NCBI RefSeq assembly: GCF_020745735.1
Contig: NC_083426.1
Coordinates: 12,524,001-12,588,000 of the forward strand
Length of the DNA: 64,000 nucleotides
Origin: Hemiscyllium ocellatum
Taxonomy: Eukaryota
Reading direction: 5' to 3'
Below, one piece after another: positions 2,582 through 63,230 of this stretch. The translations under genes and the position numbers were made by a program. Numbering within the stretch: the stretch's first letter is position 1; each line of letters opens with the position of its first letter. The notes below the pieces were generated by a model, which saw only the letters and a program-made list of their open reading frames with translations, ran no database searches and was not told the DNA's origin.

Positions 2582-2872
2582 TTAACATTTAACATTAGCA
2601 TAAATTGCCATTTCAGATTCTGAAGAATTCTCTGTTGTTGAAGAGACCACATTGTCCTCTGGAAGCTGGCTCTGAACCAGGGCATTGCCCCTGTTAGCTG
2701 AACAACTTGATGTCTCACCACTCCGTGCTGATGACTTCTTTTGAAAGTGTAAATCTGCATATACGACTCCATTTGTAGTATTCTTGAAATGGACAGTTCC
2801 TTCACTCTGTCTTGACCTGATTTGATTGTGAATACTTGAATATACAATGTTCTCTTCTGCTCCTACCATTTG
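2582..2872 (-). CDS. Gene AB terminal exon: cytoplasmic tail with ITIMs
   Basis: Acceptor ttttag|CAA (phase 0); QMVGAEENIVYSSI...VVYADL...AIYANVKC*. IVYSSI (2831-2848) and VVYADL (2750-2767) fit the ITIM consensus. Confidence 0.9.
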   Translation of the reverse strand, partial: QMVGAEENIVYSSIHNQIRSRQSEGTVHFKNTTNGVVYADLHFQKKSSARSGETSSCSANRGNALVQSQLPEDNVVSSTTENSSESEMAIYANVKC

Positions 2873-5800
2873 CTAAAACAAAAACACAAAGTTTGAATTC
2901 ATTTTTGATTAATGGTGATTTGTGTTCCTATGAAGGGAAATCTATTTTTGGATTATCATAAATTAATTGACAAACTGTTACAAGTTTTATAAGCTATCCA
3001 GCGATAAAACAAACAATTCGGTCTGGTAAGTTCATCGACACAAACCTGTTCACATTAGTCTTCATTTAAAACAATGGGTTGTGCTGTCAGTCCTTTCCAG
3101 CTCGTGTGCTGATGTGAAGTGGCAGTTAGGCAGGGAGGCAGTCAGTGTAGACAACAGCATATATATTCACAAAGGGATACACTGACAGACTACGTGAATG
3201 GGCAATATTGTGACAGGTGGAGTTCAATGTCAGCAAGTGTGAGTTTGTCCATTTTGGAATGAGATAGGATCGATCAGGATACTTTCTGGATGACATGAAG
3301 TTAAATATAATGGATGACAAAAGAAAGCTGGGAGTTCAAAGACCTTTAAAATGTCAAGTAAATCATCAAGGAAGCTAACAGAATGTTGACCTTTATGTCT
3401 AGGGTGGCACAGTGGCTCAGTAGTTAGCACTGTCGCTTCACAGAGCTAGGGACATGGATTCGATTCCCACCTCAGGCAACTGTCTGTGTGGAATTAGACA
3501 CCTTCTCCCCATATCTGTGTGAGTTTCCTTTCAAAGTCTAAAGTTGTGCAGGCCAGGTGAATTGGCCATTTTAAGTTGCCCATAGTGTTAGCTGCATTAG
3601 TCAGAGGGAAATGGGTCAGGGTGGGTTACTCTTCGAGGGTTGGTGTGGACTTGCTGGACCAAAGGGCCGGTTTCCACACTGGAGGGAATCTAACTTAATT
3701 TGGACGACAAGGATGCAGAAGTCGTGCAACACTTATACAAAATCCTGATTAGTTCCCACTTGGAGACTCTGAGCAGATCTTGGCACTCTACCTCCGGAAG
3801 GTTATTTTGGCGTTGGAGGGAATACAACGCAGGTTTACAAGAACATGACCTAGAAGTTTGGGGTTAAGTTATGAGGAGGTTTGCAGAAATTTATGTCTGT
3901 TTTCTTTCAAATTTAGAAGGGTAATTGGTGATCTGATTGAAATCTCAGGATATTAAAAGGACAAAGCTGGGTAGATAAAGATTAACTATTCCCACTATTT
4001 GAATTAGTGGGGATTGGATTAGATTCTCTACAATGTAGGGATAAGCCCTTTGACCCAACAAGTCCACATCGATCCTCCAAAGAGTAACTCACCCAGACCC
4101 ATTCTCCTCTGACTAATGCATCTAACACTATGGGCAATTTAGCATGGCCAATTCACCTAGCCTGCACATCTTTGGACTGTGGGCAGAAACCAGAGCACCT
4201 GGAAGAAACCCACGCAGTCATGGGGAGAATGTGCAAACTCCATACAGACAGTCACCTGAGGCTGGAATCAAACCTGGGTTCCTACTGCTTTGAGGCAGCA
4301 GTGCTCACCACTGAGCCACAATGCCACCCTTAATGTGAGAATTAGGGCCAGACCATTTGGGAGAGATATTCAAAATCACTTCTACATACAAAGGGTGGTG
4401 GATGTTTGGAATTCTGATTGAAGAAGCCCAAGTGAAGGATGAAAACATGCAACTCATACAAAGAGGAGTGTGTCGTCATGGTGACTAGTGGAAGTAGATA
4501 CTGGGGGAAAATACCATGAGGATTGATAGTATTTTCTTTTCCTTAATGTTTTTCTGATTTTCTATGATTACATTGAACCCGACAGAAACAGATACAAATG
4601 CAGGTTGAAAAGTGTCAGCAAATACAAAGTCATGATTAAGTGCTTAACTAAGCCTAATTTTTAATCGTAAAGACGACTCAATGTTTTTTACGCCCATCAA
4701 TTAGAATGTTCAAACTTTCACCAAGCTAGAAGCTAGTTCAGTCAGTAGCATGAATACATTTAAGGAGAATCTCAAGAAAGACAAGAGACAAAAAAGTGAG
4801 AGGCTTCTGTTGTTCGGGTTAGTTGGAGATGGGTGGGGGGAATGTTGGTGTTGAGTGTCCAGCAGGGACCAGGTGTGCTGATTGGCCTGTTTCTGTGCTG
4901 CTAGTTCATTATGTTAATTTATGATTATTATTCAAAAAATTCAAACTTGATCTCCTTACCTGATTCTCGAAAGCATTATCTGTTCCAGCACCTACACCAT
5001 CATTACCTGAAAAATTACACCATAATTGAAATATCTGGAATAGGGATAATGGATATTTGCAAAAATGCAAAACTGATGACATGTTGCAGCCTGACATTGA
5101 TTTGTTCACTTCTTCTTCTTAAATTCTGTGCGTGAAGGCATTGGGGTTACTTAACCTGTTTGGCTGCTGTGTTATGAACATCCTTCCTTTCCATCAAATC
5201 TCAGAGTGGGATTTGATGTGAAGAGGCAGGGATGCTGTTATTGCCTTACAAGACCTCCGATTCATCACCATAAAAAGGCAAGTAGTATTTTATATTTTGT
5301 TGCGAAGGGATTAGTGTAACATATGGGGAAGCAGTGAATCCATAGTGGCCGTGCTGTTTGTAGTATTGGGCTCCGCGAAGGGCCCACTTATCCTTGGGTT
5401 CGCTATTCCGGATGGAAATTGTTTTACAAGGAGGGCTTGAGTAGGATGAGCTTATATTCCCTGGCATTTTGATGATTGAAAAGTAACAACATTGAAATGT
5501 CTAAAATTCTGAAGGAACTTAGAATCATAGCATCTATGATATCTGCAGTGGGGAAGCAGATGGGTCCACACCAACCCTCCGAAGACCATCCCACCCAGAC
5601 CCATACACCCTTCTCTATTACTGTAACTCTGAAAATCCCATGGGTAATCCATTCAGCCTGCACATACCTGGACAAGGAAACATGGCCAACCCACTAAACC
5701 TGCACATCTTTGAACTGGATGAGGAAGCTGGAGCACCGAGAGAAAACCCTTGCAGACGGGGAGAACATGCAAACTCCACACAGTTACCCGAGGCTGGAAT

Positions 5801-8800
5801 CAAGCCTAGGTCTCTAGTGCTGTGTGAGGCAGCAGTGCTAACGACTGAGCCACCACGCCAGACTTGACAGGCAAACGTTGATAAAGTGTTTTTTTTTGGC
5901 TGGGGCTTCTGGAGCTGAGTGTCACGGTCTCAGAATAAAGGATGGGCCAAATTAGGACTGAGATTGGGCGAAATGTATTCACACAAAGATGAGTGAAACT
6001 TCAGAAGCCTCTCCCCAGACAGTTGTGAACACTCAGATACTGGGTGTATTGAAAGCTGAAACCAATAGATTGTTGGGAACTTATGGAATTCAGGCATTCA
6101 TAGGAAAAGACCACTCACTGAGAGATTTCCCCTTAAATAAACAGAAATAGTAGAGAAAGAATCATCTTGGCCTTAACAGAGATCTACTTGACAGTAAACT
6201 AAACCTCATTAGATTTTATAAAATACAGAGCTGCAGATGCTGGAGATCTGGAAAAAACCTGAGGTTGCTGGAGAAGCTGAGCAGGTCTGGCAGATGAAGA
6301 TGAAGAGACACTGGACCCAAAATGTTAACTCTGCTTTCTTCCCACAAATGCTGGCACACCTACTGAGTTTTCCATCAGATTTTACCCTGACAAGATCCTA
6401 CAGAGAATCCAGAACCAACCTGGGCAATCAGTCAATATTGGGCATCTGACTCTCCATCTAATTCTCTTAAAGAGGAAGTACTGCTCCTGAAATTGACTGC
6501 AACTGATTACTGTTGGATCAAATGGGAGAAATTCCACTTATGAAGTCCTCAATACTTGCAATTGTAATGTACATATTTCAACAATATGTTACATCAAGGT
6601 CTATCTAAATTTCAATTGACCAAATCACTTCCTGTCATTCACTTCTGTCAGTCTAAACCAATGTAGACGTCTCCTTCCTCCAGACTCCACCTCTTATTAG
6701 CGAGAAACATTAATTATTATTCTTCTAGGTTATATCCATCTGGACCAGAACGTGGAACAAGTTACTCCAATTTATTAATTAATGTTTGCTATTTACAATG
6801 AATTACAATTCATATAGCAAGCGATTGACATTTCATGAAATGATTAAGGAGAAAGCGACACTTACCCTTCTTAACTTGCCTCAGGTACAAAAGCAGAGAA
6901 ACAGCAAAAACAATGATCATGGCCCCCAGTGCACCGACCCCAATGTAAACCAGACTGTGATACAGAGAACAGGAAAGGGTCCGTGTGGGTTCACAATTGG
7001 TTCTTGGGCACTTGTTTAAAGAAAGGAGGCTTTAACATTTATATAGCACCTTTCATGACGTTTGAATGGCCCTCAGCATTTTACAGTTAAGGAAGTACTT
7101 TTGAGTGTTTGATGGTGTCTGAAACAGGAGATGAAGTGCATAATATCTGGAGAAAAATCTCATGAGTAACAATGAGATCTGACCAAATAAATATTAGCCA
7201 GATCTTTAGCAGAGTTCCTTATTTGTTTTTTCCAAACATATGGTCTGACTTGCTGCGTGCATCCACCACTCTCTATTTCTGTTTAATTTTCACTTCTCAT
7301 TTCCATTGTGTTTGATATTTTGTTTCTTTGTACTCTGTTAGAATCATTGGAAGTTCAAAGACTCAATTTCTCAGTGTTTATAACAGACGACAATTTCTGA
7401 TACTTACTGTCAGCAGCTTGAGCAAATAGCGTGGAAATATGAAGTGAATTCTGCAAAACGAGTATGTGAATCACAAATGAAAATGGAAAGATCTCCATCA
7501 AGCATTGACTTAACATGACACAAGGTCCAGCTGCCACCAGATAAACACCCAGTTGTTTCACAATTGGCTGACTGTGAAAATAGGCATGATTTGGAGATGC
7601 CGGCTATAAATTCTGTGTTACGATTGAGCCCTCCACAATCACCTGATGAAGGAGCGTCGCTCCGAAAGCTAATGTGCTTCCAATTAAACCTGTTGGACTA
7701 TAACTTGGTGTTGTGTGAATTTTAACTGTGAAAATAGGACTCACCATCTCCATGGACTTCAGTAAGGTGTTTGATAAGGTTCCACATGGTAGGCTGTGGA
7801 GAAAGTGAAGTCGCATAGGTTCCAGGGTGTACTAGCTAGATAGATAAAGAACTGCCTAGGCAACAGGCGACTAAGAGTAGTAGTGAAAAGGAGTTTCTCA
7901 AAGTGGAGACCTGTGACCAGTGGTGTTCCACAGGGATCCGTGCTGGGACCACTGTTGTTTGTGATATACATAAATGATCTGGAGGAAGGTACTGGTGGTC
8001 TGATTAGCAAGTTTGCAGTTGACACTAAGATTGATGGAGTAGCAGATAGTGAAGGGGACTGCCAGAGAATACAGCAGAATATAGATAGATTGGAAAGTTG
8101 GACAAAGAAATGCCAGATTGAGTTCAATCTGGGCAAATGCGAGGTGATGCATTTTGGAAGATCCAATTCAAGAGTGAACTGTACAGTAAATGGAAAAGGG
8201 CAAAAGTGAGGACTACAGGTGCTGTTGATCAGAGTCGGGATTGGAGTGATGCTGGAGGAGCACAGCAGGCCAGGCAGCATACGAGGAGCAGGAAAATTGA
8301 TGTTTTAGGCATAAGCCCTTCATCAGGAATGAGGCAGAGAGCCTCCGGGGTGGAGAGATAAATGGGAGGGCGGTGGGGCTGGGAGAAGATAGCTGAGAGT
8401 GCAATAGGTGGATGGAGGTTGGGATGAACATGATAGGTCAGAGAGGATGGTGGATCGGATGGGTGGGAAGGACGGTTAGCACGTAGGACTGGGCATAAGA
8501 ATAGCCTGAGTTGGCAGGTTGGAACTGGGGTAAGTGGGGGAGGGGAAATGAGGAAAATGAGGAAAAGTCCTTGGGAAAATTGATGTAAAGAGAGATCTGG
8601 GTGTTCAGGTCCATTGTATCCTGAAGGTGGCAATGCAGGTCAATAGAGTGGTCATGAAGGCTTACAGCTTGCTTACCTTCATCCGACGGGTTATTGAGTA
8701 CAACAGTCGGCAGGTCATGTTACAGTTGTATAAGACTTAGGTTCGGTCATGTTTGGAATACTGCATACAGTTCTGTCGCCACATTACCAAATGGATGTGG

Positions 8801-11800
8801 ATGCTTTGGAGAGGGTGGAGAGAAGGTTGACCAGGATGTTGCCTGGAATGGAGGACACTAGCTATGAAGGGAGGTTGAGTAGATTAGCATTATTTTCATT
8901 AGAAAGACGTAGGTTGATGGGTGACCTGATTGAGGTCTACAAAATCATGAGAGGTACAGACCGGGTGGATAGCAAGAAGCTTGTTCCCAGAGTGGGAGAT
9001 TCAGTTACTGGGGGGCTCACGAGTTCAAAGTGAGAGGGGAAAAGTTTGAGGGAGATGTGCAGGGAAAGTCCTTCACATAGAGGGTGGTGCATGCTGGGAT
9101 GCATTGCCAGTGGAGGTGGTAGAGGTGGGCATGATAGTGTCATTTAAGATGTATCTAGACAGATACATGAATGGGCAGGGAGCAAAGGGGATCACACCCT
9201 TAGAAAATAGGTATCAGGTTTAGATAGAGGATCTGGATCAGTGCAGGCTTGGAGGGCTGAAGGGCCTGTTCCTGTGCTGTAATTTTCTTTATTCTTTGTT
9301 CTTCTTTGACAGAGTCATAGATAGAATCATAGAATCACAGCATGGAAACAGACCTTCAGTCCAACTCATTCACACTGACCAGACATCCCGAGTTGCATTT
9401 GCCAGCATTTGGCCCATATCGCTCTAAACCCTTCCTATTCATATATCCATCCAGATGCCTTTTAAATGTGATCATTGTACCCACCTCCACTACTTCCTCT
9501 GACAGTGTTCTGTACCTGCACTGCCCTCTGCATGAAAAAGTTGCCCCTTAGATCCTTGTTAAATCTTTCCTCTTTCATCTTAAACCTATGTCCTTCAGTT
9601 TTGGACTCCCCCACCCAAGGGAATAGACCGTGGCTATTCACGTATCCATGGCCCTCACAACTTTATAATCCTCTGTAAGGTCATCCCTCAGCCTCCAAAG
9701 CTTCAAGGAATAAAGTTCCAGCCTATTCAACTCTCCATCAAACTTAAACCCTCCAGTCTCAGCAACATTCTTTACTGCATCCACTCACGTTTAACAAATC
9801 CTTCCTGTCGACATACTATGACAACGTCAACATCTGAGGGATCTATTTCGAACATCTTGTCACCATTACTCACAATCACCTAATGTCTTGTACCAGCCAA
9901 AAGGACGCATCAAATACCATCATGTGAACAGACCTCCTCAAAACAATATTCCATTCTGCCATGATAATATATTTTTGTTTCTTTGATAGAAATGTATATG
10001 ATTGCAACATTTGAAAGGCATCTGATGAATATATGAATAGGAAGGGTTTAGAGGGATATGGGCCCAATGCTGGTAAATAGGACTAGGTCAGATTGGGATG
10101 TCTGGTCAGCACAGACGAGTTGGACTAAAGGATCTGTCTCTAAGCTGTATGAGTCTATGACTCTATCTATGACTCTGCACTGTAAGGTACCTGGTATCTC
10201 CTACACCACATTGAGAATACCATCAAGACGAAGGCCTCCTCACTGCAAATTTGACCAAAGTTGACCAGGTGTTCCTCCCAAGTGACACCAAGGTTGAGCA
10301 GATTTATTAACACACAGAGAAACAACATTTCCTCAGTACCACACCGGGGTGGAAAAGGGCAAGGTCAATGTGACATTCACAGTCTTCATGAAATCCTATC
10401 AAGGTAGTAGTGAAGTAATTGTGATGAATAATGGATCTGAGGGCCAGCAACCTGCAGCTGTTTTCCACTTGTTCTTGTTTCCAACACAAATATCACAATT
10501 TGTTGAGAAGCTAATGCCACAGCCTGATGTCAATCCAGCCCCATTTCCATTCTGAGAGTTATGTCGTGAAATAGTAAATGATTTCCATCCCGAATAACAA
10601 AACAGTTTTCTAGAGGATTTAATCTATCACATGGAAGTCATCAAACACTAACGTTGAGATAGTCGTACCTTATACCAAGTTGAGACGTGATGTTTGAATT
10701 TGTAGTTGTCGATGATACTGTTGAAATTTTATAACAGTCATCAGCTCCTATTGTAACAAAGGAATAACATTCAGATTAACCTTTTTTTGCTATAGTTAAC
10801 CAAAAGAGCAACATTGTAAGATTGGAAGAAACGCCTGTCTGATACAATGGATTTGGAAAGTATAATCTCAGTGTGATGTCCACCCCCTCACCAGCCGGGT
10901 GTTCCCACTGTGACCTGTCAGTGACCCATCTTTCACGGTCGTTTCTAATTGTTTCCCATATGTCACAGATGGGAGCACAGCATTACCTACTGAGCCTGTT
11001 AAAGGACTCCATTCCCAACATCCCCTTTGTGTCCTCTGCAAACGCATAATTCCAGCCAGAGAACTGTCACTCCTCATCACTCGAGGAGGTGATGACCAAG
11101 TGGTGTTATTGCTAGACTATTAATCCAGAGAGGCGAAAGTGAGTAGTGCAGATGCTGGAGATGAGAGTCAGGATTAGAGTGGTGCTGGAAAAGCACAGGA
11201 CGTTAGGCAGCATCCTTGATGGTAGGCTTTTGCTCAAAACATCAATTTTCCTGCTCCTCAGATGCTGCCTGACCTGCTGTACTTTTCCAGTACACCACTC
11301 TAATCTTGACTATTAATTCAGAGACTCAGCAATGCTGTGGGGAGCTGGTTTTAAACCCTGCCATGCAGATAGTGGAATTCCAGTGTCATCAAACAAAAGA
11401 AACTGGAATTAAAAGTCTGATAGAGATCACAAATCTGTTGTCGATTGTCAGGAAACAACCATCGGGTTCTGATGTCCTTGAGGGAAAGGAACTGCCATCC
11501 TTACCTGATCTAACCTACATGTGACTCCAGACCTACAGCAATGTGGCTGACTCTGAACAATTCAGAATGGGAAATAAATGTTGGCTTAGTCAGTGACACC
11601 TACATTCAGTGAATGAATAAAATATTCACCAGAAAATGTTTTTCTGGAGACCTAATAACTTTGATTCTGGCCATGATGGAAAAGGAGCTTCAGCTGCACA
11701 CTGTATGTGGAGGGAAATATTAGACCAGGAATTACTGCCTTCAGTGTCAGTGACCAAATAACCAATATTCATTCGATATTCCCCTGATCAGATCTTATTG

Positions 11801-14800
11801 CTTGTCTCCAAGGCTCCCCACATCCATTGAACCTGCAGGTAAGTGCCTCAGATGTGATTCAGATCATTCATTTAATTCAAAATCTCACAATAAATTGTGC
11901 TGATCCTGCATCTTTCACAACCTCAGCACATCTTTAGATTAGACTTACAGTGTGGAAACAGGTCCTTCGGCCCAACAAGTCCACACTGACCCACCGAAGC
12001 GCAACCCACCCATACCCCTACATTTACCCCTTACCTAACACTACGGGCAATTTAGCCTGGCCAATTCACCTGACCCGCACATCTTTGGACTGTGGGAGGA
12101 AACTGGAGCACCCGGAGGAAACCCACGCAGACACGGGGAGAACGTGCAAACTCCACACAGTCGGTCGCCTGAGTCGGGAATTGAACCCAGGTCTCAGGCG
12201 CTGTGAGGCAGCAGTGCTAACCACTGTGCCACCGTGCCGCCCAGTTAAATACTACACAACCCACAAAGCTCTTCCCTTTATTGTAATCCTGGTTATGACA
12301 TGGGGAAACAGAAGCTAATTTGCATACATGAGAAATTCCCACAAATGTTATCACCAGATAATCTGCTCTCCATCATCTGAACTGAGGGGTGAAGTTGATG
12401 AAATACTGAGTGAATTTTCCTGTTCTTCCTTGAATTATACCAGCTGACTATTCTAATGTTTCTCACTGAAAGCAACATTGATGAAACAGTTCCTGCTGTT
12501 TAAACTGTTACATTCAAAGATGGTAAAGGCACCCTTAACTCAGAACCAAGTCTTTGCCCCATTTTGATTCTGATACAGTCAGTTTCTGGTCAATGTAAAT
12601 CTGAGATTTCTATTTGTAATTTGAGATGATGCAATGTTACAGCAAAGAAGAAGGAAGTTTAGAACAGAAGAAGGGTGACTGGATCTGAAAGTTTAAATCT
12701 ACTTTCTCTCCACAGAAGCTGCCAGAACTGCTGAGTTTCTCCAGCAATTTCAGTTTTTGTTTCAGATTTTCAGAATCTACAGTTCTTTGATTTTATTAAT
12801 ATCCTTTCACTTCCCTTTTAAACATTATTATTAACTCGGTTTCTAACACATATTCCAGCCTGCAATCCATGTTGCAAAGGATATTTACATCTGGGCCAGG
12901 GTTTGAGTATAAAATTGAATGCTCTCACTCCAGTGTGTTGGTGAAGGAATGCTGCAGGGCTGGCAGTGCTACCTTTTCGGTAAGATGTTAAACTGAAACT
13001 CCATCTGCCAACTCTGATCAATGCCAATGATCCAGGGCACTATCTTGAAGAAGAATAGTGCAGTTACTCCAGTATCTGGATAATATTTATCCCCCAATTA
13101 AAGATGTCATCTCGTGATTTTCACATTGTCATTTGTGATAGTTGTCTCTGGACAGATTGATTGCTGCACTTCCTGTATTGCAGGAGTGAGCAGACTTCAA
13201 CAAGCAATGGCTATAAATGCTTTAGATGTCCAGAGATTGTGCTCAGTCACTTCCATTTTAGATAAACTCTTTAACACTCTCTCCTGACATCCATCCTAAA
13301 TGAGAATGCAGGAGCTGGAAGTCACAATAGCTATTTCAGCTGTTGAAGACTCATCAATTTACTGGAATTTCTGCAAAATTTATCCATGTTTTTAAGATAT
13401 TTTATAATCTTAGTCTTCATCAGGAATGAAGGACTTTTGCCCAAAATGTCACTTTTCCTGCTCCTTGGATGGTGCCTGATCTGCTGTGCTTTTCCAGCAC
13501 CACTCTAATCTAGACACTGATTTCCAGCATCTGCAGTCCTCACATTTGCAATGTTGATTTTATAATCTTATCCTTATTTAACTAAATTGTCTTGTTCCGA
13601 TCTATTGAAAAACCAGATGAAGTAAATTTGGCCAGTTCCAATTTTTCAGACTGACTGCACGAATATAATCAGCAACTAATCTGTGAGACATTTATATTTT
13701 GACAATTACATTGTTTGTTTACAGTGTAACTTACCACTGGTGCTGACTTGTGCCACATAACTGCAGTTCTCCCCTGGTCTGTGTGTGACTGACACATTAA
13801 CCATTTCACTGGGTTTTGTTCCCTGAGTATTTGAGGCTGTGCAGTAATATTGATGATGTTGCTGTGTGAAGGATTGACAATGTAGATCCAGTTTACTGGT
13901 GTTAGAGATCTTTGAATCTTGAGATGGGGTCCTTTCATACCATGTGTAGTGAATGGGGAGGGATCCCTGGACACATTCACAGGAGATTGACACCGAGCTC
14001 CCAAAACATGAGGCATTTGATGGAGATGATAAAAATCTAAGTTCAGGAAGAGACACAGGATCGGGGGAAAAGAAGCAGATATTCAGATACCACATGAACA
14101 GCATTCAAATACATTCTTTTTGTGAACATTTCTACACTTCTACATCTCATACAGGGCTTATATGTTGGAATATCCTCAACACACCTCCCTCTCCATACCA
14201 CTCCGGACTCCAAGTAAAGTGATTTCCCATGTCTACTATTACAGGTGGTTCTCCTATAATGCTATAGTTGTGTTCCAGTGAGACCTCGCTGAATATAAAT
14301 AATGGGGCCTACGGGAAAAGTGGGGTTAGGGCAGACAGGCAAAAAATATCACTCAAGAGTGCTCAAATATCACCCAAAAGTCTAACGCGAAGTATAGCAC
14401 AGCCTGAATGAAGGTGGAAATCATATTTATTAATGAGACAAAAGTAAATTTAACACAGTGCATTTTAAAATGTCTGAAGGCTGCTCTCTGTGCAGTCCCT
14501 CTCACAGAAAGCTGCTCTGTCAGCAGCTGATATCAGCACATGTGCAGGACAGTGCGGAGACTTTGGCGCGGACATCGCTGTATGTGCAGAACGAAGCATG
14601 CAAACCCATCCCTGCTGGAAATGTGCGAGTAACAAAGGAGGTAAACGTTCTTGAAAATACCATTCCCTAATTCTTCAACAACGTTCTAGTCAAATCGCGC
14701 AGCCAAAGAGTACGTTATCCCAGAACTAACTGTATATCAGAACTTAGGAGAACTCTAAATCAGGACAAATGCAATGATGATGGTCATGAGTCAACATGGA

Positions 14801-17800
14801 AATCAGAGCCAATATTTTCTCTCAGTAGCAGATCAAAGACTGTAACTGGTTCAGTGTTTGATTTGCAAATGGAAAGCTGTCGGACAGAAACTTACATAAA
14901 AATGGAATAAAATAAGACAATAAATTGGCTGATATTTGTTGCAAGCTTTCTGGCCTTAAACACAGAATTTAAATATGCTTTGTCCGACTTCACTGTGACT
15001 GAAAATGACATTTTAACTCAAACATCCAGAGGGAGGTGGCAATTTGTGTTTCAGGGATTCTGAAATCCAGAAATGCTGGGTAAATGGATGTTGTGCCAGA
15101 TTTACTGTCTACTTCAGTGTCCCCAGAGCCAATGTCTTTAAGATATAATTTGGGTGAATTTATTGTTTACACTGACTAGAATCCGATCCAACATTCATCA
15201 GCCAAATTGGAGTAATGGGTGTGGAGTAACATTTTCCCCTTTATCTCTGCATCAAGAGAGTATCGAGACACACTGGTGACCAGACACATCCTTAGGACGG
15301 TTCCTGAGAGGAACTCACTGGATTCTCCTTTTGGCTACAAGTTCTGCATGTGTTCACCAGAGAGTGTGTAGTGTTTTAGTGATTGTCCTTCATGTTAGCT
15401 GAAGCAGTAATGCATACTTAATCTAGGTTGATCCTGATTGACACACAAGAGGCAATTGTGTATCTTGGATGCAACGCAATGAGCTATTCCTTGATGTGCA
15501 ATAATCCAATCTGCTGTTTGATCAAATCAAACTGATATTCTCCTTAAGACAGTATGAGGCTATTCTTCCCGAGTGATATCAATGGGCTTGAATAATATCA
15601 GCAAAGTGGTTGGTAGCAGAAAAGCTCCATAAAATGTTTCTGAATGACCTATTACAGCACATCCCAGAGCCCATCCCTCTCTCTCTGCACTGACAGCATG
15701 TCCCAGACTGAACCTGGCTCTTCCCCTTCAGGGAACTTGCTCAGGTCCGAGTGGTGCCCACTGCTGCTGAGGGACCAAAAGTCACATCCCCATTCACTTC
15801 CCTCTGTACTCAGTGTTAAATGACTGCAGGCAGCCATTGGGAATGGAGGTGTAAACTCTCACAATGTTTTAGCTGGTGGGGACAAGGAAAATAAGAACGA
15901 CAGCACTCAATTTCATCAAATTTGATGCTTTTAGATCAGTCGTCTTGGCCTCAAAGTTCCAATTCTTTTTCCAAAGCATTGAGCTACCTGCCCCCCAAAT
16001 GCAAAACCCTTTCACTGTCACGGGGCATCAGGATACTGGAAATGTCATGTTCTTTCACAGATAAAACATCGATCTTACATCTCAATGGGGAATAATAAAT
16101 GATATCACTGAGAAATGTACCATCAGATATTTGCAGCTCTACAGCAGACACTGAAATGAGGCCGGATTGGTCAATACCACAGCTGTACCATCCTGCATCT
16201 TCAAAACGAAGATCCTCCATAGTAACAGAAAATTTATTTTGTGTCGTGTTATCTGTGATCGACATCCTTCCTCGTTGTCCATGATGTTCACTTGATTTTA
16301 CTAAAACAGAGCACTGGCGCATCCAAAGTTTCACAGACCATTGTGACCATTGGCCATAGTGACAGTCTATTGTGATCGCTCTTCCCAAAACTCCTGTTAC
16401 TTTCCTTTTCACCGGCACTACACCTGAACCTGAAAAGACTATGAATTCATCAAACAGAAAATAGCTTCTCAACACATTCAGATACTTTTAATATGAGTTA
16501 CCACTAAGTACAGAGGTACCACTGCATCTACTCAGGCAGTTTGTGGTAAAATCCATATAATTGTGTTAGGGAGACCAGCATTGTTTGAGAAATGTAACAA
16601 CCAGTGGGCACTCATTTGCAAAGCTTTTTCACAGCAACATTCAATTCTGCCCAGCAACAGGGTTTGTATCAAATAGCCTCAAAATGGGGTGTTTTGAAGT
16701 ATTTCAGTTGGTCACTCAGCACAGTTTCTGGGTCACTAAGAGGAGTTCAAATGATTACAGACAGCGACTGAAGGTCACTGAATTTTGGAAAAGGCAGAGA
16801 GGAGACTTCTTCAAAGCATTGTTACTAGCATTGTAGTCTTGTGGACAAGGCAACAGAATTGCTTGGCTTCTACAGAGGGGACTATGAGTGAAGCTCAAAG
16901 GCAGTTGTATATGGCTAGGCTGTGTTGGATATGGCCATCAGTGATCTGGAGTAACTCTGAAGGACCCATTAGGCTGAGATCTTTGAGGGTAACACATGCA
17001 GTGGTGTCACCACACCGCAGGTAGAGGGGGAACTGACAGAAAAGGAATGGGAGACCACCCAGACAGAGTGAAAACATGAGGCAGGGAGTGCAGGAATACA
17101 CTGAGGCTGTATTCCTTTCTCATAGATTTTCCCTTTTGAATGCAACTGGGGGAAATGTGTTCTCAGGTGACTGCAGCGTAAGTCACATCCATGGCACCAG
17201 GAGTGGCTCAGCTGCCTGATTGTGGGGAGAGAGGGATTTAGACTTTTGAGGTATTGGGTCCAATTCTGGAGAAGATGGAATCTTTCCAAGTTGGACGGGT
17301 CATGAATCAGCAGGATCAAGACCAATACTCTCCAAGGGGCATTTGCTAGTTCTGTGATAAGACATTAAGCTTGGGTGGCAGGGTGCCATGATCATGGATC
17401 ATCACCTCATGTCACCTATGGATATCATAGAATGAATCATAAAATCCTGTAGTGTGTAAACGGGCCATTTGGCCCAAAAAATCACTACCAACACTACCAC
17501 TTCACATTCCCCCAGACTAATGCACCTACCCGACACACTATGGGTGATTTAACCTAACCTGCATATCATTGGATTGTAGGAAGAAAGCAGAGCACCTGGA
17601 GGAAACCCACAAAGACACAGGGAGAATGTGCAAACTCCACACAGACAGTAACCCGTGTCTCGAATTGAACCCAGGTCCCTGGTGCTGTGAGGCAGCAGTG
17701 CTAACCATTGAGCCACTGTGCCTCTGACATCTTATTTTTCAAGTATTTTCAAGTGTAACTATATTTCATTTAATTGCTTATATATAGAAATTTACTTTCG

Positions 17801-20800
17801 ATATTTGTTTTTAAAGAGAACTGATCAAGCCAAAGTGAGTACAGATGTGAATTCAGTGGAGATGTGGAGGGAGACCTTGGAAATTTGTACAAAACAGTGT
17901 GTCACGGAAACTTCAAAAGGATTGACTTAAATGGAGAAATATACAGAAAAAAAATGTATTCACCAGCACGGGATGGGTTGGAAGACCATTGTTCTGGACT
18001 TTTATTTCAGCAAGGCTGGACATTTTACTTCTTTATTTTCTAACATTTTGTAACTAAATAAACTGCACCTAGCTACCTTTGTACTTAAGATGTCACTGTA
18101 AGTGGCGACATAAACCTTTTCCCTGTACTCATTGAATGTATGTGATGGTAAAACTAATTTATCTGTGGACAGAGTCAAAAATCACACAACACCAGGTTAT
18201 AATCCAACAGTTTATTTGGAAGCACTAGCTTTCAAGCACTGCCCCTTCATCAGGTGATTGTGGAGGTTAAGATCATGCTCATAGAATTTATAGCCAAATG
18301 AGCCCAGTATCATGGAGATGTGATACAGTAAACAATCTTAGATTAAAACTTTCATCTTTGATAATGGAATGTGCTGGTTTCTGTTCTTTGTTAGGTAAAT
18401 CCCAGAATTTATTTGAAATCACATTCTCAAAATAGCACAGCTTTTTAAACAATAGCTGTGAAGTCTGTGTCCCAATGCTATGTCAAACTGACAATCCCTC
18501 TGTATAGTTTTACAGAGTTTTACATGGATTCATGCAGCAAAAATATAATGTAATTCTGGAAAAACAAATTCACCCCAGAAGCTGATATATGTGCATATGG
18601 AGGGGAGACAGATTGAGTTGCATGTGTGAGTGTGGATGTCAACCCACATGATAGAGTGTGTGTGTATATATGTGTGTGAGTAAGCTTGGCTCAGTGTGTG
18701 TGTGAATATTATGGTTATCTGTGAGGAGGTGCGCGTGTCGGTTTGAGTGTGTGTGTGTGTGTGTGTGTGTTTGAGAGAGAAAGCGAGAGTTTCGTGCAGT
18801 GGGGTCATCTGCTGTGTGACTTGAGCCCTAGGCCCCAGGTGATCTGTAGACAGCGTGGTGTGAAGGTCACAGTTTGGTGAACAGCCATTAAATATCCCTG
18901 CAGATTGGGAAAAGAATGAGGTTACACCTTTTCCTAATCGGAGTGCTGCCGGCCAGTATTTGTCAAACAAATGAATTTCAATTAACCTGCTCAACGCCAA
19001 GAATCTCAATCAACTGCTCAGTGCTCCAAGTAACATCCACTGTCATGGCTGTAATGTTCTCCTATCCACTCTTGATAAACAACTCAGAGTCTCAATCTCT
19101 TTAAATAACTTATATTATTTTCTTTAGAGTCACTTCATACTCTCAATATCTGTATATGTATGTTGTATTATTCATACTTCATTTGTTAAGTAAAGAACAA
19201 ACTCACTCACTGTTAACTCAAGAAAGCCCAGTTAATTGACTCCTCTTAGAACATAAACACATATGGTTTGGGAGAAAGGTAACAACAAAATAGAGAATAC
19301 ATTGTATTCTATTAATGCACAGATGAAATCAAAACAAACAAACTGCAGGTCTTGAACAGAAAGTATTATTTACCTCGGTTCCCAATCTGTGCCAGGAAAA
19401 TGCAGTTCCTCTCTGATCTGTGGACAATTGTCACTTTAACCATTTCACTGTATTGTTCTCCCTGAGTGTTTGAGGCTATGCAGTAATATTGATGATCTTG
19501 CTGTTTGAATAATTGACAATGTAGATCCAGTGTATTGTTCTCAGAAATCTTTGAACCTACAGATCGGATCCTTTCGTACCATGTGTACCGAATGGGAAAG
19601 GATCCCTGGACAGACTCACAGGAGACAGAAACTGGGTTCTCATAACACCAGATATTTGGTGTTAAAAATCTAATTACAGGGACAGACACAGGTTCTGTGG
19701 GAAAGAAACAAATGATCAGATACTCACTGAGGATCCAAAAATCAAATAATCTGTAAATTTCAACATTTCTATCTTTTCATCCAAGTATTTTCATATTGGA
19801 ATCTCCACAGAGCATGCTGATTTCAACTTAATATTGCATTAATTGAGAAATTAACAGACTGTAATTGATCCTCCAGAACATTTTGGATATATTTACGTGG
19901 TCACTTGAAGTGCCAGACCATGCAAGGCTATAGGCAAAGTACTGGAACATGGGATCACGTTAGATAGATGCTTGTTGACCAGCACGGACATAATGGGACA
20001 GAGGTTCTCTCAGTGTGCTGTTGTACTCTATGTCTCTAAAATGGATGTTGACAGGATTGGCTGGCTTCCAGAAATTCTGGGAACTGCTGTGTTGCTCCCA
20101 AACTTTGTGATACTGCAACCGACCATTACCAACTTGAGTTTTTTGGAGCAGGATGTTGTAGAGCTGACTAGAGGATGGGTTATTTTGGATGTACATCAAA
20201 GCCATGAGAAAGAACTAATTAAAGCCCTTGATGTAAAAGAACTTTTGGGATGAATGATCAGAATATGAGAGAATTATATGTTATGTCAGGAAGTGAGATA
20301 TTTCAAGCCGAAACAAGGTAAAATTAGGAAAATTATGAAAGAGAGAGACACAAATTGGCTGAGTTGGATTAGAAAAAAGTGAGGAATGTAGATATTGGAG
20401 ATCAGATGCTGGAAAAGCACAGCCAGTCAGGCAGCATCCACGGAGAAGGAGGATTGACGTACAGGCATTAATCCTGATGAAAGGCTTAGGCCCGAAACAT
20501 CGATTCTCTTGCTTCTTGAATGCTGCCTGACCGGCTGTGCTTTTCCAGCACCACACGCTTCGAGTCTGCGCTGAATTACAGAAGTAAATTGAATGGCAGG
20601 ATTATGGGTTGTGAGAAAGATATAAAACATCTTGAGGAGGATTTGGATACACTTAACGATTGGGCAGGACTTAGTCAATGCCCAACTTGGAGAAATGAGA
20701 AGTTATCCACTGTGGTCGCAAGAACTGATGTGCAGTGTCTTCTTCAAAAGGTGAGATGTTGGAAAGTACGGCTGTGCAAAGATACTTGGATGCTCTTGTC

Positions 20801-24229: not shown

Positions 24230-24320
24230 CTAATGTTTTCGTGTAAACATTGTGACTGAAACAGAACAAATCACCAGGAGAGTGAAGAGTACCCAGCGTA
24301 TCACATCCCAGACAACGTAA
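24230..24320 (-). pseudogene. Orphan activating-type TM exon
   Basis: ttttacacag|T TAC...CAT TAG|gtgagc; YVVWDVIRWVLFTLLVICSVSVTMFTRKH*; no Ig exon found upstream on this strand. Confidence 0.75.
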
Positions 24321-24397
24321 CTGTGTAAAATGGAGAAATACAAAATCATTTGAAGGAAACAACGCCGCTTCATACTTCAAACATATATTCCTTTGAA

Positions 24398-29984: not shown

Positions 29985-30021
29985 ATGTGGACTTTGATTC
30001 TCCTCATCTGTTCCATTCCCG
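29985..30021 (+). CDS. Gene C leader (signal peptide) exon
   Basis: ATG TGG ACT...CCC G|gtgagt; MWTLILLICSIP, phase 1; an in-frame upstream ATG lies at 29964. Confidence 0.85.
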
Positions 30022-36770: not shown

Positions 36771-36901
36771 TATGACAGTGAATGGAATAATGAAGGGAAA
36801 AGTGTTGGTGGTTTCTAGCTTTTCAAATACAGTCAGTTTTCTAATAAATGTTTATTTCCCAAAAAGGAAAGTTTCCTGAACTTCAGTTTTAATCACAACC
36901 A

Positions 36902-37132
36902 AATGTCTCATGCTCTGGGGGTTTAGTCACAGTCTCCTGTGAGTCTGCCCGAGGATTCCTCCCCATTCACTACACATGGTCTGAGAAGACCCCATCTCAA
37001 GATTCAATGATCTCTGACACCAATAAACTGGAGCTACATTGTCAATCCTTCACACAGCAACATCATCAATATTACTGCACAGCCTCAAATACTCAGGGAA
37101 CAAAACCCAGTGAAATTGTTCATGTCTCAGTT
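36902..37132 (+). pseudogene. Truncated C2 exon fragment with no acceptor or donor
   Basis: NVSCSGGLVTVSCESARGFLPIHYTWSEK...QYYCTASNTQGTKPSEIVHVSV; open frame but both ends missing. Confidence 0.85.
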
Positions 37133-38212: not shown

Positions 38213-38303
38213 TTACGTTGTCTGGGATGTGATGCGCTGGGTACTCTTCACTCTCCTGGTGATTTGTTCTGTTTCAGTCACAATGTTTACACGAAAACAT
38301 TAG
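38213..38303 (+). CDS. Activating-type TM/terminal coding exon of the gene C locus
   Basis: ttttacacag|T TAC...CAT TAG|gtgagc; YVVWDVMRWVLFTLLVICSVSVTMFTRKH*; phase-2 start like the gene AB TM exon; Asp and Arg in the hydrophobic segment. Confidence 0.78.
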
Positions 38304-44201: not shown

Positions 44202-44241
44202 ATGATGTGGACTTTGATTCTCCTCATCTGTTCCATTCCCG
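44202..44241 (+). CDS. Gene D leader exon
   Basis: ATG ATG TGG ACT...CCC G|gtgaat; MMWTLILLICSIP. Confidence 0.85.
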
Positions 44242-47014: not shown

Positions 47015-47322
47015 TTTCAGGTGCTTTTGGACAGAGAAACACATAACAGGAATTTATCACAATATCTTGTCACCACGTAGAAGGTGGTAGCAGCCACACA
47101 TGAAATATTGGTGTCACGGATGGACTTGTTCATGTAATGTTATAGCACTGACAAATTGGCCAAATGGGAGAATATCAATCACTGATAACAAAACACAAGG
47201 AATATTTCTTGTTACAATAAAGAATCATCAATAAGAAGATGCCGGATGGTACAGCTGTGGGATTCAGATTCCTGGTATTTACTCTGACCCCATGTCTAAT
47301 GTAAACCTGCACATCTCTGAAG
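47015..47322 (+). pseudogene. Gene D V exon with frameshifts and stops
   Basis: Indels near the 5' end (GRA segment deleted), TAG 47088-90, TAA 47232-34; KYWC and DAGWYSCG still readable. Confidence 0.88.
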
Positions 47323-47460
47323 GTAACTGTTTCAGTGATTTTCTTAAATTACCCTTTGTTGATATGTGTGATCAGTGTTTTATCAAGGAAGAAAGGGGGT
47401 GACAAAGCGAGGAAGGGTATTTGTATATTCGATCTCTCAATAATTGTTTCTTTCCCACAG

Positions 47461-47784
47461 AAGCCGTCTCTGTTCCTGGGCTTCGATATTTATCCCAAAC
47501 AAATGTCTCATGTTCTGGGGGTTCAGTGACAGTCTCCTGTGAGTCTGCCCAGGGATCCCTCCACATTCACTACACATGGTCTGAGAAGATGCCATCACAA
47601 GATTCAAAGATCTCTGACACCAATAAACTGGATCTACATTGTCAATCCTTCACACGGCAACATCATCAATATTACTGCACAGCCACAAATACTCAGGGAA
47701 CAAAACCCAGTGAAATGGTTCATGTGTCAGTCAACAATGTAAGAGAGAAGAACTGCAGTTATAGGATACAGATCAACAGCATCG
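47461..47784 (+). CDS. Gene D C2 exon (open frame, inside a pseudogene)
   Basis: tttcccacag|AA GCC...ATC G|gtaagt; 324 nt, phase 1-1. Confidence 0.85.
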
Positions 47785-50468: not shown

Positions 50469-50780
50469 GGATTAGCGTCAGTGGAAGAGAACTTGGTATA
50501 TGCAAATATAAACCATGTTCAAAGGAACACAGCAGAAAGACAGAGAGCGAGAAGAAGCAACTTGAAGAATGATGAAATCACACACGCAGTGTTGGAATTT
50601 CAAAAGAAATCTTCATCACTGAGAGGTGGGCTGGCAATGCACACAGGTGACAACTCAGACAGTGTCACCTACAGTGAGCTCAACTTTCCAAACCAACCGC
50701 CAAAGGGGAATAAAAAAGCCCCAAAACGCAACACCCCTCAGGAATCTGGAAGGGACGTTTATGATGATATTGATTTTTAG
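50469..50780 (+). CDS. Gene D terminal ITIM exon
   Basis: ttttag|GGA (phase 0); LVYANI, VTYSEL, DVYDDI; aligns with the gene AB tail (EEN.VY, FQKKSS). Confidence 0.88.
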   Translation, partial: GLASVEENLVYANINHVQRNTAERQRARRSNLKNDEITHAVLEFQKKSSSLRGGLAMHTGDNSDSVTYSELNFPNQPPKGNKKAPKRNTPQESGRDVYDDIDF

Positions 50781-53915: not shown

Positions 53916-53952
53916 ATGTGGACTTTGGTTCTCCTCATTTGTTCCATTCCCG
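53916..53952 (+). CDS. Gene E leader exon
   Basis: ATG TGG ACT TTG GTT...CCC G|gtgagt; MWTLVLLICSIP; phase 1 matches the V exon at 62218. Confidence 0.85.
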
Positions 53953-61149: not shown

Positions 61150-63230
61150 CTTGATTTGGAAATTTCTCAAATTAAGTCTTGACATTAGAGTAATTGTATT
61201 TATGCAATTAAGTTGAGAAAATATACTTGCTTCTGATCCCCAACAGGTCTCCACCAAATCCTGTCTCAAAAGGTTTAGCTTACTGTATTTTTCTGAGGTA
61301 AAGTAAGTCAATAATTATTTGAATTGAAAGCTAGCAAGAGCCATTCACTATTTATTCACCCTGTCGTAAACTCCACAACATCAGCAATAATCTATGAACA
61401 CTCCAGAAGGTATGCAGTTTCCTCTCTGCTCTCTGATAGGTGTGGATTAGATCATTATTCTGGAAAGGTCACTCTGACGTTGTCTTTTATAACCCTGTCA
61501 ATAACTATGTCACAAGAGTGACCAACACCAAAATGCCAACAGTTTGAAATCAGTTAAAAATGATACATATACATTATATTTACATCTATATATGTACAGA
61601 AACCTTTCATCACACCTCCCCATGAAGAAGATTGCAAATATATCATTCAGAGCCATTATCATTTCATATCAAAAATAATTTTAAAAAACCTTAGTTTTAT
61701 GTTCTTTTAATAGTAACAATAATAACATACATTGAGTTTAATGACAACCTTTTTGAAACATAATTCATTTGAATTACACAAATTGTGTTTTTTCAAACGT
61801 GTCTTGATAAACGATCCACTATGATAATGTCTACGCAGGCGCATGAATGATTTTTAAATTGCATGGTCAGAAAATTAAACTCCACAGAAGTAACCATAAA
61901 TTTTTGTCCCAATTTTATTTCTAAGTAATCGAAAGGATTACAGCCCATATAGTTACAGGAATCAAAGGCGATCAGGAATAAATGGGAAAGGGAAGTTCAG
62001 AACACAGCCAGATCAGCCAGGACCTTCTCAATGGCAGAGCAGGCTTCAAGGGCTGAAGGTCCCACTTCTGCATTATCGTTTCAGATTATACTTCCTAACA
62101 TATACGTCACAGATATAGTGCAGTTTGTACAGAGATATAACGTATTAAGTGATATTTATTTGTATTAAGAACTTATTTTTTCTTCCAATTCCTGAAAAGT
62201 TGAACATTTCTCCCCAGCTTCATCAAATTTGTGGACAAACGAAAAAGTAACTGGAACTGTGGGAAGATCGATCACAATAAATTGTAGATATGACACATGG
62301 TTCAAGTCCAACATGAAATACTGGTGTCTTGGTCGGTCTGCCCGTTGCTCATATTTGGTGAGAACAACTGATCCAGGTGGACAGCAAGGAAGAATGTCAA
62401 TCAAAGATTACACAGCACAAGGAGTATTTGTTGTGACCATGGAGGATCTTCGCATCAAAGATGCAGGATGGTACAGCTGTGGTATTGATAGACAAGTTAT
62501 TGATGAATTACGTGCTGTGAAGGTTGAAGTATCTGATGGTACATTTCTCATTGATTTCTGTTAGTAATCTCTAATGAAATGTCTGATCAATGTTTTGTCT
62601 GGGAGAAACCATGAACACTCCAATATCTCAAGGTGCCCCAGAAATGCTGATACTTGCTGGGGGGAACATAGGAACAGGAGGAGGCCATTCATCCTATTGA
62701 TCCTGCCCCACACTTTGCTGCGATCATGGCTGATCGAACACTTCAATACCATTAATTTTTCCTCCCATTAATCATTAAAAATGTATCACCTTCTACTTTA
62801 AATGTACAACTTAAAATCTGGTGAACCTATGATACACTCCATCTCTGGCAGTATTATCTTTTCTGAGATCAGGTGATCAAAACTGCAAACAATACTTCAG
62901 GTGTGGTCTAACCAAGATCCTACACAACATCTGAAGCAAGAATTCTCAAATCCTCTTGTATTAAATGTTAATATTCCATTAGCCTTCCAAATAACTTGCT
63001 GCACCTGCAAGTTAGCCGTCAGTATCAGATAGACAAGGGCATCCAAGTGACTTTGCAAATCTGTACTTTCCAACATCTCACCATTTGAAAACTACACTGC
63101 ACATCAGCTCTTCCTACCAAAGTGGATAACCTCACATTTCTCCACATCATAGACCATTGACCAAAATCCTGCTCAATCATTAAGCATATCCAAATCCTCC
63201 TGAAGAAGTTTTGCATCTTCCTAACAACAC
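61150..63230 (+). repeat. Inverted segmental duplicate of about 20580-22880
   Basis: Co-linear reverse-complement similarity across intron, V exon and downstream CR1. Confidence 0.85.
62218..62538 (+). CDS. Gene E V-type Ig exon (CD300/pIgR-like), intact; gene presumably continues beyond the window
   Basis: tctccccag|CT TCA...GAT G|gtacat; SSNLWTNEKVTG…CRY…KYWCLGRSARC…DAGWYSCG; 321 nt. Confidence 0.92.

What the first reader, a model, noticed from the sequence alone, without database searches (positions are those of the whole stretch)
2582..62538. Shark paired-receptor cluster built from a CD300/pIgR-type V domain fused to an FCRL/PECAM-like C2 domain
Seen: four V+C2 modules plus a further V exon, two ITIM tails, and two copies of a charged short-tailed TM, in both orientations. 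The V domains carry the CD300/pIgR/TREM hallmark C-C' pair (KYWC…C) and D.GWY.C. The C2 domains carry SC…GS.PI.Y.W, the pattern of FCRL/PECAM-1/Allergin-1 domains. Established: mammalian CD300 proteins have one V domain and pIgR has only V domains. To my recollection no bona fide pIgR orthologue is established in cartilaginous fish. Inference: this is a lineage-specific paired activating/inhibitory family joining two Ig-receptor domain types, and a candidate for missing shark Ig-binding or lipid-binding receptors. Automated annotation may already label these CMRF35-like or pIgR-like without noting the architecture.
Basis: partly seen in the sequence, partly recalled or inferred. Interest (0 to 1): 0.8.

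Follow-up and report, generated by a model that had tools for sequence, protein, structure and literature searches.

The report
Epaulette shark MDIR immune-receptor cluster
This stretch of epaulette-shark DNA holds several copies, some of them broken, of an immune-receptor family (MDIR) first described in a skate in 2006, so the exons are real but the V-plus-C2 layout is neither new nor shark-specific.

Summary
The exons are real. The window is Hemiscyllium ocellatum. It holds five V exons of CD300/pIgR type, five C2 exons, two ITIM tails and two charged-TM exons ending in a stop.

Three V and three C2 exons are intact. V32, C32, C36 and V47 are pseudo-exons. The two minus-strand modules form one V-C2-V-C2-TM-ITIM gene. 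That gene has no leader exon in the window, and one of its splice acceptors reads CG.

The domain typing holds. The V exons are closest to CD300F, then pIgR. The C2 exons are closest to FCRL5 and FCRL4.

The interpretation does not hold. The same layouts, ITIM tails and charged TM occur in clearnose-skate MDIR2, MDIR3 and MDIR5, at 42-68% identity to the window's exons. Full-length V-C2 relatives with an Arg-Trp TM also occur from teleosts to reptiles. V and C2 trees agree with each other, so the pairing predates the split between cartilaginous and bony vertebrates.

The likely mechanism is paired inhibitory and activating signalling. The ligand is unknown. Reviews from 2014 and 2026 still report no pIgR or FCRL in sharks, so Ig binding remains an untested idea. 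I obtained no RNA evidence. Another agent of this scan reached the same MDIR verdict about 246 kb upstream.

The parts
21316..21636 (-). V21: first Ig exon (V-set, CD300/pIgR type, KYWC..C) of the minus-strand four-Ig gene. Phase 1-1, with AG and GT splice sites.
19374..19694 (-). C19: first C2 exon of the minus-strand gene, intact, with canonical splice sites.
16121..16429 (-). V16: second V exon, intact. Reads KLWM..C, so one cysteine of the extra pair is lost.
13735..14061 (-). C13: second C2 exon. The reading frame is intact but the acceptor dinucleotide is CG instead of AG.
10669..10747 (-). Stalk exon (ADDCYKISTVSSTTTNSNITSQLGI).
6866..6954 (-). Uncharged transmembrane exon (LVYIGVGALGAMIIVFAVSLLLYLRQVKK).
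4960..5006 (-). Small cytoplasmic exon of 47 nt (GNDGVGAGTDNAFENQ).
2582..2872 (-). Cytoplasmic tail exon with IVYSSI and VVYADL (ITIM) and AIYANV (ITIM-like), followed by the stop codon.
24230..24320 (-). Orphan charged-TM exon (YVVWDVIRWVLFTLLVICSVSVTMFTRKH, then stop). The TAG is followed directly by GTGAGC. No Ig exons lie upstream of it on this strand.
29985..30021 (+). Leader exon MWTLILLICSIP of plus-strand pseudogene a.
32019..32345 (+). V32: V pseudo-exon with an in-frame TAG at 32079.
32429..33025 (+). C32: C2 pseudo-exon split by an insertion of about 200 bp (32586-32785) that is repeated elsewhere in the window.
36848..37132 (+). C36: orphan C2 pseudo-exon with a TAA at 36890. Homology to the other C2 exons ends at 37132, next to a retroelement ORF.
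38213..38303 (+). Charged-TM exon (YVVWDVMRW..., then stop), an inverted duplicate of the copy at 24230-24320.
44205..44241 (+). Leader exon of plus-strand pseudogene b.
47025..47345 (+). V47: V pseudo-exon with frameshifts and two stop codons.
47461..47784 (+). C47: intact C2 exon with canonical splice sites.
50469..50780 (+). Second ITIM tail exon, with LVYANI and VTYSEL. A third motif has decayed to ITHAVL. No TM exon was found upstream of it.
53916..53952 (+). Third leader exon (MWTLVLLICSIP), the probable true leader of the V62 gene.
62218..62538 (+). V62: first V exon of the gene for XP_060700982.1 (V-C2-V-C2, annotated 'Fc receptor-like protein 5'). It is 100% identical to residues 23-129 of that protein, and the gene runs off the window.

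Best explanation
The window is part of the epaulette-shark (Hemiscyllium ocellatum) cluster of MDIR genes. MDIR stands for modular domain immune-type receptor, a multigene family first described in the clearnose skate.

The unit is a V domain of CD300/pIgR type followed by a C2 domain whose nearest outside relatives are FCRL domains. After these come a cysteine-containing stalk and one of two endings: an uncharged TM with a tail of ITIM motifs, or a TM carrying Asp and Arg (WDVIRW) that ends in a stop codon.

The window holds:
- one four-Ig ITIM gene with an uninterrupted 594-codon reading frame, but with no leader exon and one defective acceptor;
- two decayed two-Ig genes;
- an orphan activating TM exon;
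- the 5' end of a second four-Ig gene.

Inferred mechanism (not shown here): inhibitory members recruit SH2 phosphatases through phosphorylated ITIMs. Activating members pair through the membrane Arg with an ITAM adaptor of the FcR-gamma or DAP12 kind. The V domain, by analogy with CD300, binds a lipid or another conserved ligand. Tandem and inverted duplication, exon shuffling and pseudogenisation generate the diversity.
For: Species and gene identity: V62 is 100% identical to residues 23-129 of XP_060700982.1 from H. ocellatum.

Family membership: a profile search returned UniProt-named skate MDIR2, MDIR3 and MDIR5. Their layouts are V-C2-TM-ITIM, V-V-C2-V-C2-TM-ITIM, and V-C2-V-C2 with the TM sequence WKVGRW. 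The window's exons are 42-50% (V) and 45-68% (C2) identical to them, at E of 1e-25 to 1e-42. A chimaera protein named MDIR2 has the same layout.

Trees: the window's V and C2 domains fall in a shark clade that is sister to the ray and skate clade holding the MDIRs.

Gene model: the spliced minus-strand model gives an open frame with ITIM motifs.

TM conservation: the Arg-Trp TM motif is conserved from sharks to amphibians and gar.

Evolutionary rate: dN/dS between paralogous exons is 0.56-0.85, and exon identity roughly equals intron identity, as expected for fast-evolving receptor clusters.

Against: I obtained no expression data.

The one open four-Ig gene lacks a leader exon and has a CG acceptor at C13, so no functional protein may be made from this window.

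Ligand, adaptor pairing and phosphatase recruitment are inferred by analogy only.

The original MDIR paper (Cannon et al. 2006) could not be read here. The family's published definition therefore rests on database names, one citing paper and my own recollection.
Confidence: 0.85

Rival explanations
1. One reading: a shark-specific new family, made by fusing a CD300/pIgR-type V domain to an FCRL/PECAM-type C2 domain.
For: Automated names for these proteins are a muddle of 'FCRL5', 'pIgR-like', 'CMRF35-like' and 'A33-like'.
Against: The same layout is found in named skate MDIRs, in chimaera, and in teleosts, gar, sturgeon, coelacanth, amphibians and reptiles, with a conserved stalk and TM. The V and C2 trees agree with each other and with the species tree.
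Confidence: 0.03
2. These genes are the functional pIgR or Fc receptors of cartilaginous fish and bind IgM, IgW or IgNAR.
For: pIgR has the highest summed score for the V domain. FCRL and Fc-receptor D2 domains are the nearest solved relatives of the C2 domain. Reviews state that pIgR, FCRL and classical FcRs are lacking in sharks, and ask how sharks opsonise and secrete Ig (PMC4016189; PMC13337447).
Against: The V domains fall outside the pIgR and pIgR-like group on the tree. The layout and the tails are those of paired ITIM and adaptor-coupled receptors, not of a transcytosis receptor. No binding data exist.
Confidence: 0.07
3. They are the shark orthologues of the bony-fish DICP family, which has D1-D2 or D1a-D2a-D1b-D2b layouts with ITIM tails or an Arg in the TM.
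For: The modular layout and signalling variants are identical (preprint 10.1101/2021.06.11.448072).
Against: I inspected the bowfin DICP D1, D2 and TM exon translations in that preprint's Table S1. They lack KYWC..C, D.GWY.CG, GS.PI.Y.W, QYYC.ASN and the WD..RW TM motif. No DICP-named protein appeared in three profile searches. The gar homologue is a lone gene, not part of a cluster. This rests on inspection by eye, not on a scored comparison.
Confidence: 0.05
4. Nothing in this window is functional. All copies here are relics of duplication within the larger cluster.
For: Four Ig exons are clearly dead. One TM exon is orphaned. Pseudogene b has no TM exon. The four-Ig gene lacks a leader and has a CG acceptor. 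Exon and intron divergence are about equal. No gene other than the V62 gene is called in the 10 kb upstream of it.
Against: The four-Ig gene keeps 594 codons open, and seven of its eight acceptors and all of its donors are canonical. Skipping the phase 1-1 C13 exon would keep the frame. A distant or unrecognised leader cannot be excluded.
Confidence: 0.35

Closest known systems
MDIR family (modular domain immune-type receptors; clearnose skate MDIR2, MDIR3, MDIR5; Cannon et al. 2006, Immunogenetics 58:362)
   Same: The two domain types are the same and come in the same order: V-C2, V-C2-V-C2 and V-V-C2-V-C2. The stalk cysteines match. Tails are either ITIM tails or a short-tailed TM carrying Arg-Trp. 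It is a multigene family with many modular variants. Domain identity is 42-68%.
   Different: The species and the copies differ, and the window's domains form shark-specific subclades. The activating TM here carries Asp plus Arg (WDVIRW), whereas skate MDIR5 carries Lys plus Arg (WKVGRW).
Unnamed bony-vertebrate V-C2 genes with an Arg-Trp TM (for example gar LOC107076814, coelacanth LOC102366132, and newt and caecilian 'pIgR-like')
   Same: They are homologous over the full length, including the stalk cysteines and the TM motif. Their V and C2 domains form the nearest outside clades.
   Different: They are mostly one gene per species, about 300-350 aa long, and of the activating type only. The shark family is expanded and includes ITIM and multi-module forms.
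CD300 / CMRF35-like molecules
   Same: The V domain has the extra C-C' disulfide, and CD300F gives the best single-domain match (64 bits). The family also pairs ITIM members with charged-TM members.
   Different: CD300 proteins have a single V domain and no C2 domain.
pIgR and FCRL
   Same: The V domains resemble pIgR D1, D4 and D5. The C2 domains resemble FCRL5 and FCRL4 domains.
   Different: pIgR has only V domains and a transcytosis tail. FCRLs have only C2-type domains. On the trees the window's domains fall outside both groups.
DICP (diverse immunoglobulin domain-containing proteins of ray-finned fish and coelacanth)
   Same: The layouts are D1-D2 or D1a-D2a-D1b-D2b, with ITIM or Arg-TM variants and clustered multigene loci.
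   Different: The bowfin DICP exon translations lack the MDIR sequence hallmarks. DICP looks like an analogous family and not the same one.

Membership tests
MDIR | Significant sequence similarity of each ectodomain to skate MDIR domains | tested here: met
   blastp of the window's exons against MDIR2, MDIR3 and MDIR5 gives 42-68% identity at E of 1e-25 to 1e-42.
MDIR | Modular ectodomains built from a V-like domain and a C2/I-like domain in variable numbers | tested here: met
   HMM domain maps show V-C for MDIR2, V-C-V-C for MDIR5 and V-V-C-V-C for MDIR3. The window has V-C-V-C and V-C.
MDIR | Members with cytoplasmic ITIMs and members with a charged TM residue | tested here: met
   ITIM motifs are IVYSSI, VVYADL, LVYANI and VTYSEL. 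Charged-TM exons lie at 24230-24320 and 38213-38303. The skate counterparts are shown.
MDIR | Phylogenetic placement with MDIRs rather than with other IgSF families | tested here: met
   The elasmobranch clade holds the window's domains and MDIR2, MDIR3 and MDIR5 (C2 tree 93/89; V tree 90/80). The subclades are well supported.
CD300 | A single V-type ectodomain with the extra disulfide, followed by a stalk | tested here: not met
   The V type matches, but every module carries a C2 domain.
pIgR | An ectodomain made only of V-type domains, a long non-ITIM tail, and V domains that cluster with pIgR | tested here: not met
   C2 domains are present, the tails are ITIM tails or a charged TM, and the V domains fall outside the pIgR and pIgR-like group (93/87).
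FCRL | An ectodomain made only of FCRL-type C2 domains, with C2 domains that cluster with FCRL | tested here: not met
   V domains are present. Mammalian FCRL5 C2 domains are separated by a 100/100 branch of length 1.11. Single-domain HMM scores are at most 29 bits, against 60-200 bits within the family.
PECAM-1 / Allergin-1 type C2 | The C2 domain is specifically closest to PECAM-1 or MILR1 | tested here: inconclusive
   Neither is among the best 60 sequence-profile matches. Both appear among weak fold matches, at ranks 7, 12, 20 and 23 with E of 5e-3 to 1e-2.
DICP | D1 and D2 sequence hallmarks and linkage to the MHC | tested here: inconclusive
   The hallmarks are absent when bowfin DICP exons are inspected by eye. 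No scored comparison was possible. MHC linkage was not testable from this window.

The most novel reading that the evidence does not exclude
MDIRs combine the V type of pIgR, CD300 and FcmuR with the C2 type of FCRL and FcR. They could be the missing Ig-binding receptors of cartilaginous fish. Alternatively, they could be living representatives of the ancestral receptor from which the V-only and C2-only Fc-receptor lineages arose by domain loss.
Probability: 0.1. Interest if true: 0.75.

Novelty: new member of a known kind. Interest (0 to 1): 0.3.

Why it matters
The finding matters mainly as a correction. Automated annotation calls these genes 'Fc receptor-like 5', 'pIgR-like', 'CMRF35-like' or 'A33-like' and merges neighbouring genes into one model. 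That hides the fact that they are MDIRs.

Reviews from 2014 and 2026 state that sharks lack pIgR and FCRL. Yet this family carries the nearest shark relatives of both domain types, so it is a reasonable place to look for shark Ig or lipid receptors. That idea is untested. The window itself adds only further copies, partly decayed, of a described family.

Tried and rejected
- RNA evidence. No run on record as RNA holds the stretch. Splicing and expression are therefore untested.
- Reading the source papers. The look-ups for Cannon et al. 2006 and for two further papers by PMC id (one recalled from memory, one from a reference list) found nothing held.
- A word-indexed search with chimaera MDIR2 found only itself.
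- A coelacanth homologue could not be placed on a contig to compare with the published DICP coordinates.
- DICP orthology was considered and set aside after inspecting the bowfin DICP exon translations.
- A Foldseek search of the C2 model against the PDB gave only generic Ig and FnIII matches, with E above 1e-3.
- A leader exon for the minus-strand gene was sought by motif, by fuzzy match and by a generic scan for a signal peptide followed by a donor. None was found.
- The long ORFs at 51.8-53.2 kb and 54.7-55.7 kb were rejected as genes. They lie in minisatellites with 35-bp and 34-bp units.
Full report
**What is in the window.** A self-search with the Ig-like ORFs and six-frame reading give the following map.

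- Minus strand: V21, C19, V16, C13 and an ITIM tail at 2582-2872.
- Plus strand: V32, a split C32, an orphan C36, V47, C47, a second ITIM tail at 50469-50780, and V62.

Pfam calls the V exons V-set at E of about 1e-12. The C2 exons score just under threshold for Ig_3, Ig_2 and Ig_C17orf99.

**Which exons are intact.**

- V32 carries a TAG at 32079.
- C32 is split by an insertion of about 200 bp that is repeated elsewhere in the window.
- C36 has a TAA at 36890 and loses homology at 37132, next to a retroelement ORF.
- V47 has frameshifts and two stops.
- V21, C19, V16, C13, C47 and V62 are open.

**Gene models.** Full-length shark relatives came from an exhaustive profile search with the three intact C2 exons. 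I mapped them back onto the window.

The minus-strand exons form one gene, in this order:

| Exon | Coordinates |
|---|---|
| V21 | 21636-21316 |
| C19 | 19694-19374 |
| V16 | 16429-16121 |
| C13 | 14061-13735 |
| stalk | 10747-10669 |
| uncharged TM | 6954-6866 |
| 47-nt cytoplasmic exon | 5006-4960 |
| tail | 2872-2582 |

Spliced together, these give 594 open codons ending in IVYSSI, VVYADL and AIYANV.

Two defects stand out. The C13 acceptor reads CG where the paralogous exons have AG. No leader exon could be found on the minus strand. By contrast, three canonical leaders (MWTL[I/V]LLICSIP) lie on the plus strand at 29985, 44205 and 53916.

The charged TM exons lie at 38213-38303 (+) and 24320-24230 (-). 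Both read YVVWDV[M/I]RWVLFTLLVICSVSVTMFTRKH. Both end in a TAG that abuts GTGAGC. The minus-strand copy has no Ig exons upstream of it and lies inside an inverted duplication.

Pseudogene b (leader at 44205, V47, C47, tail at 50469) has no detectable TM exon.

**Species and annotation.** V62 is 100% identical to residues 23-129 of XP_060700982.1. That protein is annotated 'Fc receptor-like protein 5' of Hemiscyllium ocellatum and has a V-C2-V-C2 layout. Its gene spans 22 kb and leaves the window.

Neighbouring paralogues are annotated 'pIgR-like', 'A33 antigen-like', 'CMRF35-like' or 'uncharacterized'. Several models merge two or more genes.

**Domain types.**

V domain. The best single-domain matches among solved structures are CD300F/CLM-1 (64 bits, E 9e-17), CD300C-like and CD300A. 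pIgR has the highest summed score. NKp44, FCMR, TLT-1 and TREM2 follow.

C2 domain. A single exon finds FCRL5 first. A 30-sequence family profile ranks the matches as follows:

| Match | E-value |
|---|---|
| FCRL5 (six stretches) | 1.6e-66 |
| FCRL4 | 5.7e-13 |
| CD22 d6-d7 | 1e-12 |
| VSIG4 | 1.5e-11 |
| CEACAM | intermediate |
| FcepsilonRI and FcgammaRIII D2 | about 1e-5 |

PECAM-1 is not among the best 60.

An AlphaFold model of C13 (pLDDT 87) gives weak fold matches to VSIG4, SLAMF9, FCRL1-6, Allergin-1, PECAM-1 and CD22.

In the 1.8-billion-protein library, scores are bimodal. Family members score 60-200 bits per C2 domain. The next tier scores at most 29 bits. That tier consists of multi-C2 proteins named FCRL5, CD22-like, hemicentin-like or CEACAM5-like.

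The similarity to FCRL is distant.

**What the family is.** One chimaera protein in the hit clusters is deposited as 'modular domain immune-type receptor 2'. A profile search of V-C2 proteins then returned the clearnose-skate proteins by name: MDIR2 (416 aa), MDIR3 (701 aa) and MDIR5 (501 aa).

Domain mapping and reading of their sequences show:

- MDIR2 is V-C2-TM-ITIM.
- MDIR5 is V-C2-V-C2 with the TM sequence YISWKVGRWLLF and a short tail.
- MDIR3 is V-V-C2-V-C2-TM-ITIM.

The window's V exons are 42-50% identical to these, and its C2 exons 45-68%, at E of 1e-25 to 1e-42.

[quoted passage not shown] I could not read the 2006 paper itself.

**Not shark-specific.** C2 domains of the same type, each preceded by a V domain, occur in teleosts, gar, coelacanth, a caecilian and a newt. 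They also occur in sturgeon, turtle and gharial.

The full-length alignment conserves KYWC..C, D.G.YWCGI, the C2 core, two stalk cysteines (NC.Y...Y.C) and the TM motif W-[DE]-x-x-R-W.

In the C2 tree the bony-vertebrate sequences form a 100/99 clade that follows the species tree. The elasmobranch sequences, including the window's and MDIR2, MDIR3 and MDIR5, form its neighbour. Mammalian FCRL5 domains sit across a 100/100 branch of length 1.11. The V tree gives the same picture, with pIgR and pIgR-like V domains outside (93/87).

The V-C2 pair, the stalk and the Arg-Trp TM are therefore older than the split between cartilaginous and bony vertebrates. Rows were chosen by hand, about one per species or layout. 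All other hits were left out of the trees.

**DICP.** Bony-fish DICPs share the layout (D1-D2 or D1a-D2a-D1b-D2b, with ITIM or Arg-TM variants, in clusters). However, the bowfin DICP exon translations lack the MDIR hallmarks on inspection. The gar homologue of the shark family is a lone gene. I treat DICP as an analogous family. No scored comparison was possible.

**Mechanism.** Shown here: the two alternative membrane and tail modules, and their conservation. Inferred: ITIM-SHP inhibition, Arg-mediated pairing with an ITAM adaptor, and a lipid or other ligand for the CD300-like V domain.

Between paralogous exons, dN/dS is 0.56-0.85 and exon identity equals intron identity at about 87%. This fits rapid birth-and-death evolution.

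**Open question.** Reviews from 2014 and 2026 state that pIgR, FCRL and classical FcRs are absent from cartilaginous fish, and ask how sharks opsonise and secrete Ig. MDIRs carry the nearest shark relatives of both domain types, so Ig binding is worth testing. Nothing here supports it directly.

**Earlier notes of this scan.** Other readers noted the four-Ig gene, the TM exon whose stop codon abuts a donor, and the V62 gene. I checked each of these myself. Another follow-up agent reached the same MDIR verdict for DNA about 246 kb upstream. That agrees with this report but is not independent evidence.

Noticed in passing
window 14062-14063 (minus strand): The acceptor of the C13 exon reads CG where paralogous exons have AG. 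The exon is phase 1-1, so skipping it would keep the frame and give a V-C2-V receptor.
   Followed up: partly
window 21640-34000 (minus strand): No signal-peptide exon could be found for the four-Ig ITIM gene, which is otherwise open. Upstream of V21 the homology switches to an inverted copy of the segment carrying the TM exon. The gene may therefore be a 5'-truncated duplicate.
   Followed up: partly
window 51846-53209 and 54991-55583: Two minisatellites (35-bp unit x 38 copies, and 34-bp unit x 17.6 copies) create long spurious ORFs of up to 446 aa on the minus strand.
   Followed up: yes
window 53916-53952 and 59180-59257: The annotated protein XP_060700982.1 starts with a non-signal first exon at about 59180. 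A canonical leader lies at 53916. The protein's C-terminus is 90% identical to the other reading frame of this window's charged-TM exon copies. The model is probably wrong at both ends.
   Followed up: partly
P0128, P0109, P0102, P0161, P0304, P0313, P0319, P0322 (not in the window): Bony vertebrates from teleosts to reptiles carry a gene, mostly single-copy and mostly 'uncharacterized', with the layout V-C2-stalk-TM and a W[DE]xxRW motif. It is homologous to shark MDIRs over its full length. No bird homologue appeared, and the only mammalian hit had V domains only. The searches were limited to shared words.
   Followed up: partly
P0001, P0002, P0151, P0173, P0179 (not in the window): Several NCBI gene models in sharks fuse two to five neighbouring MDIR genes into one protein, or read through introns.
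   Followed up: partly
window 1702-2046, 7883-8209, 34010-35212, 37154-38044, 56974-57231: There are many reverse-transcriptase fragments of LINE type and short interspersed repeats. One short repeat is inserted in C32, and a retroelement ORF abuts the end of C36.
   Followed up: no
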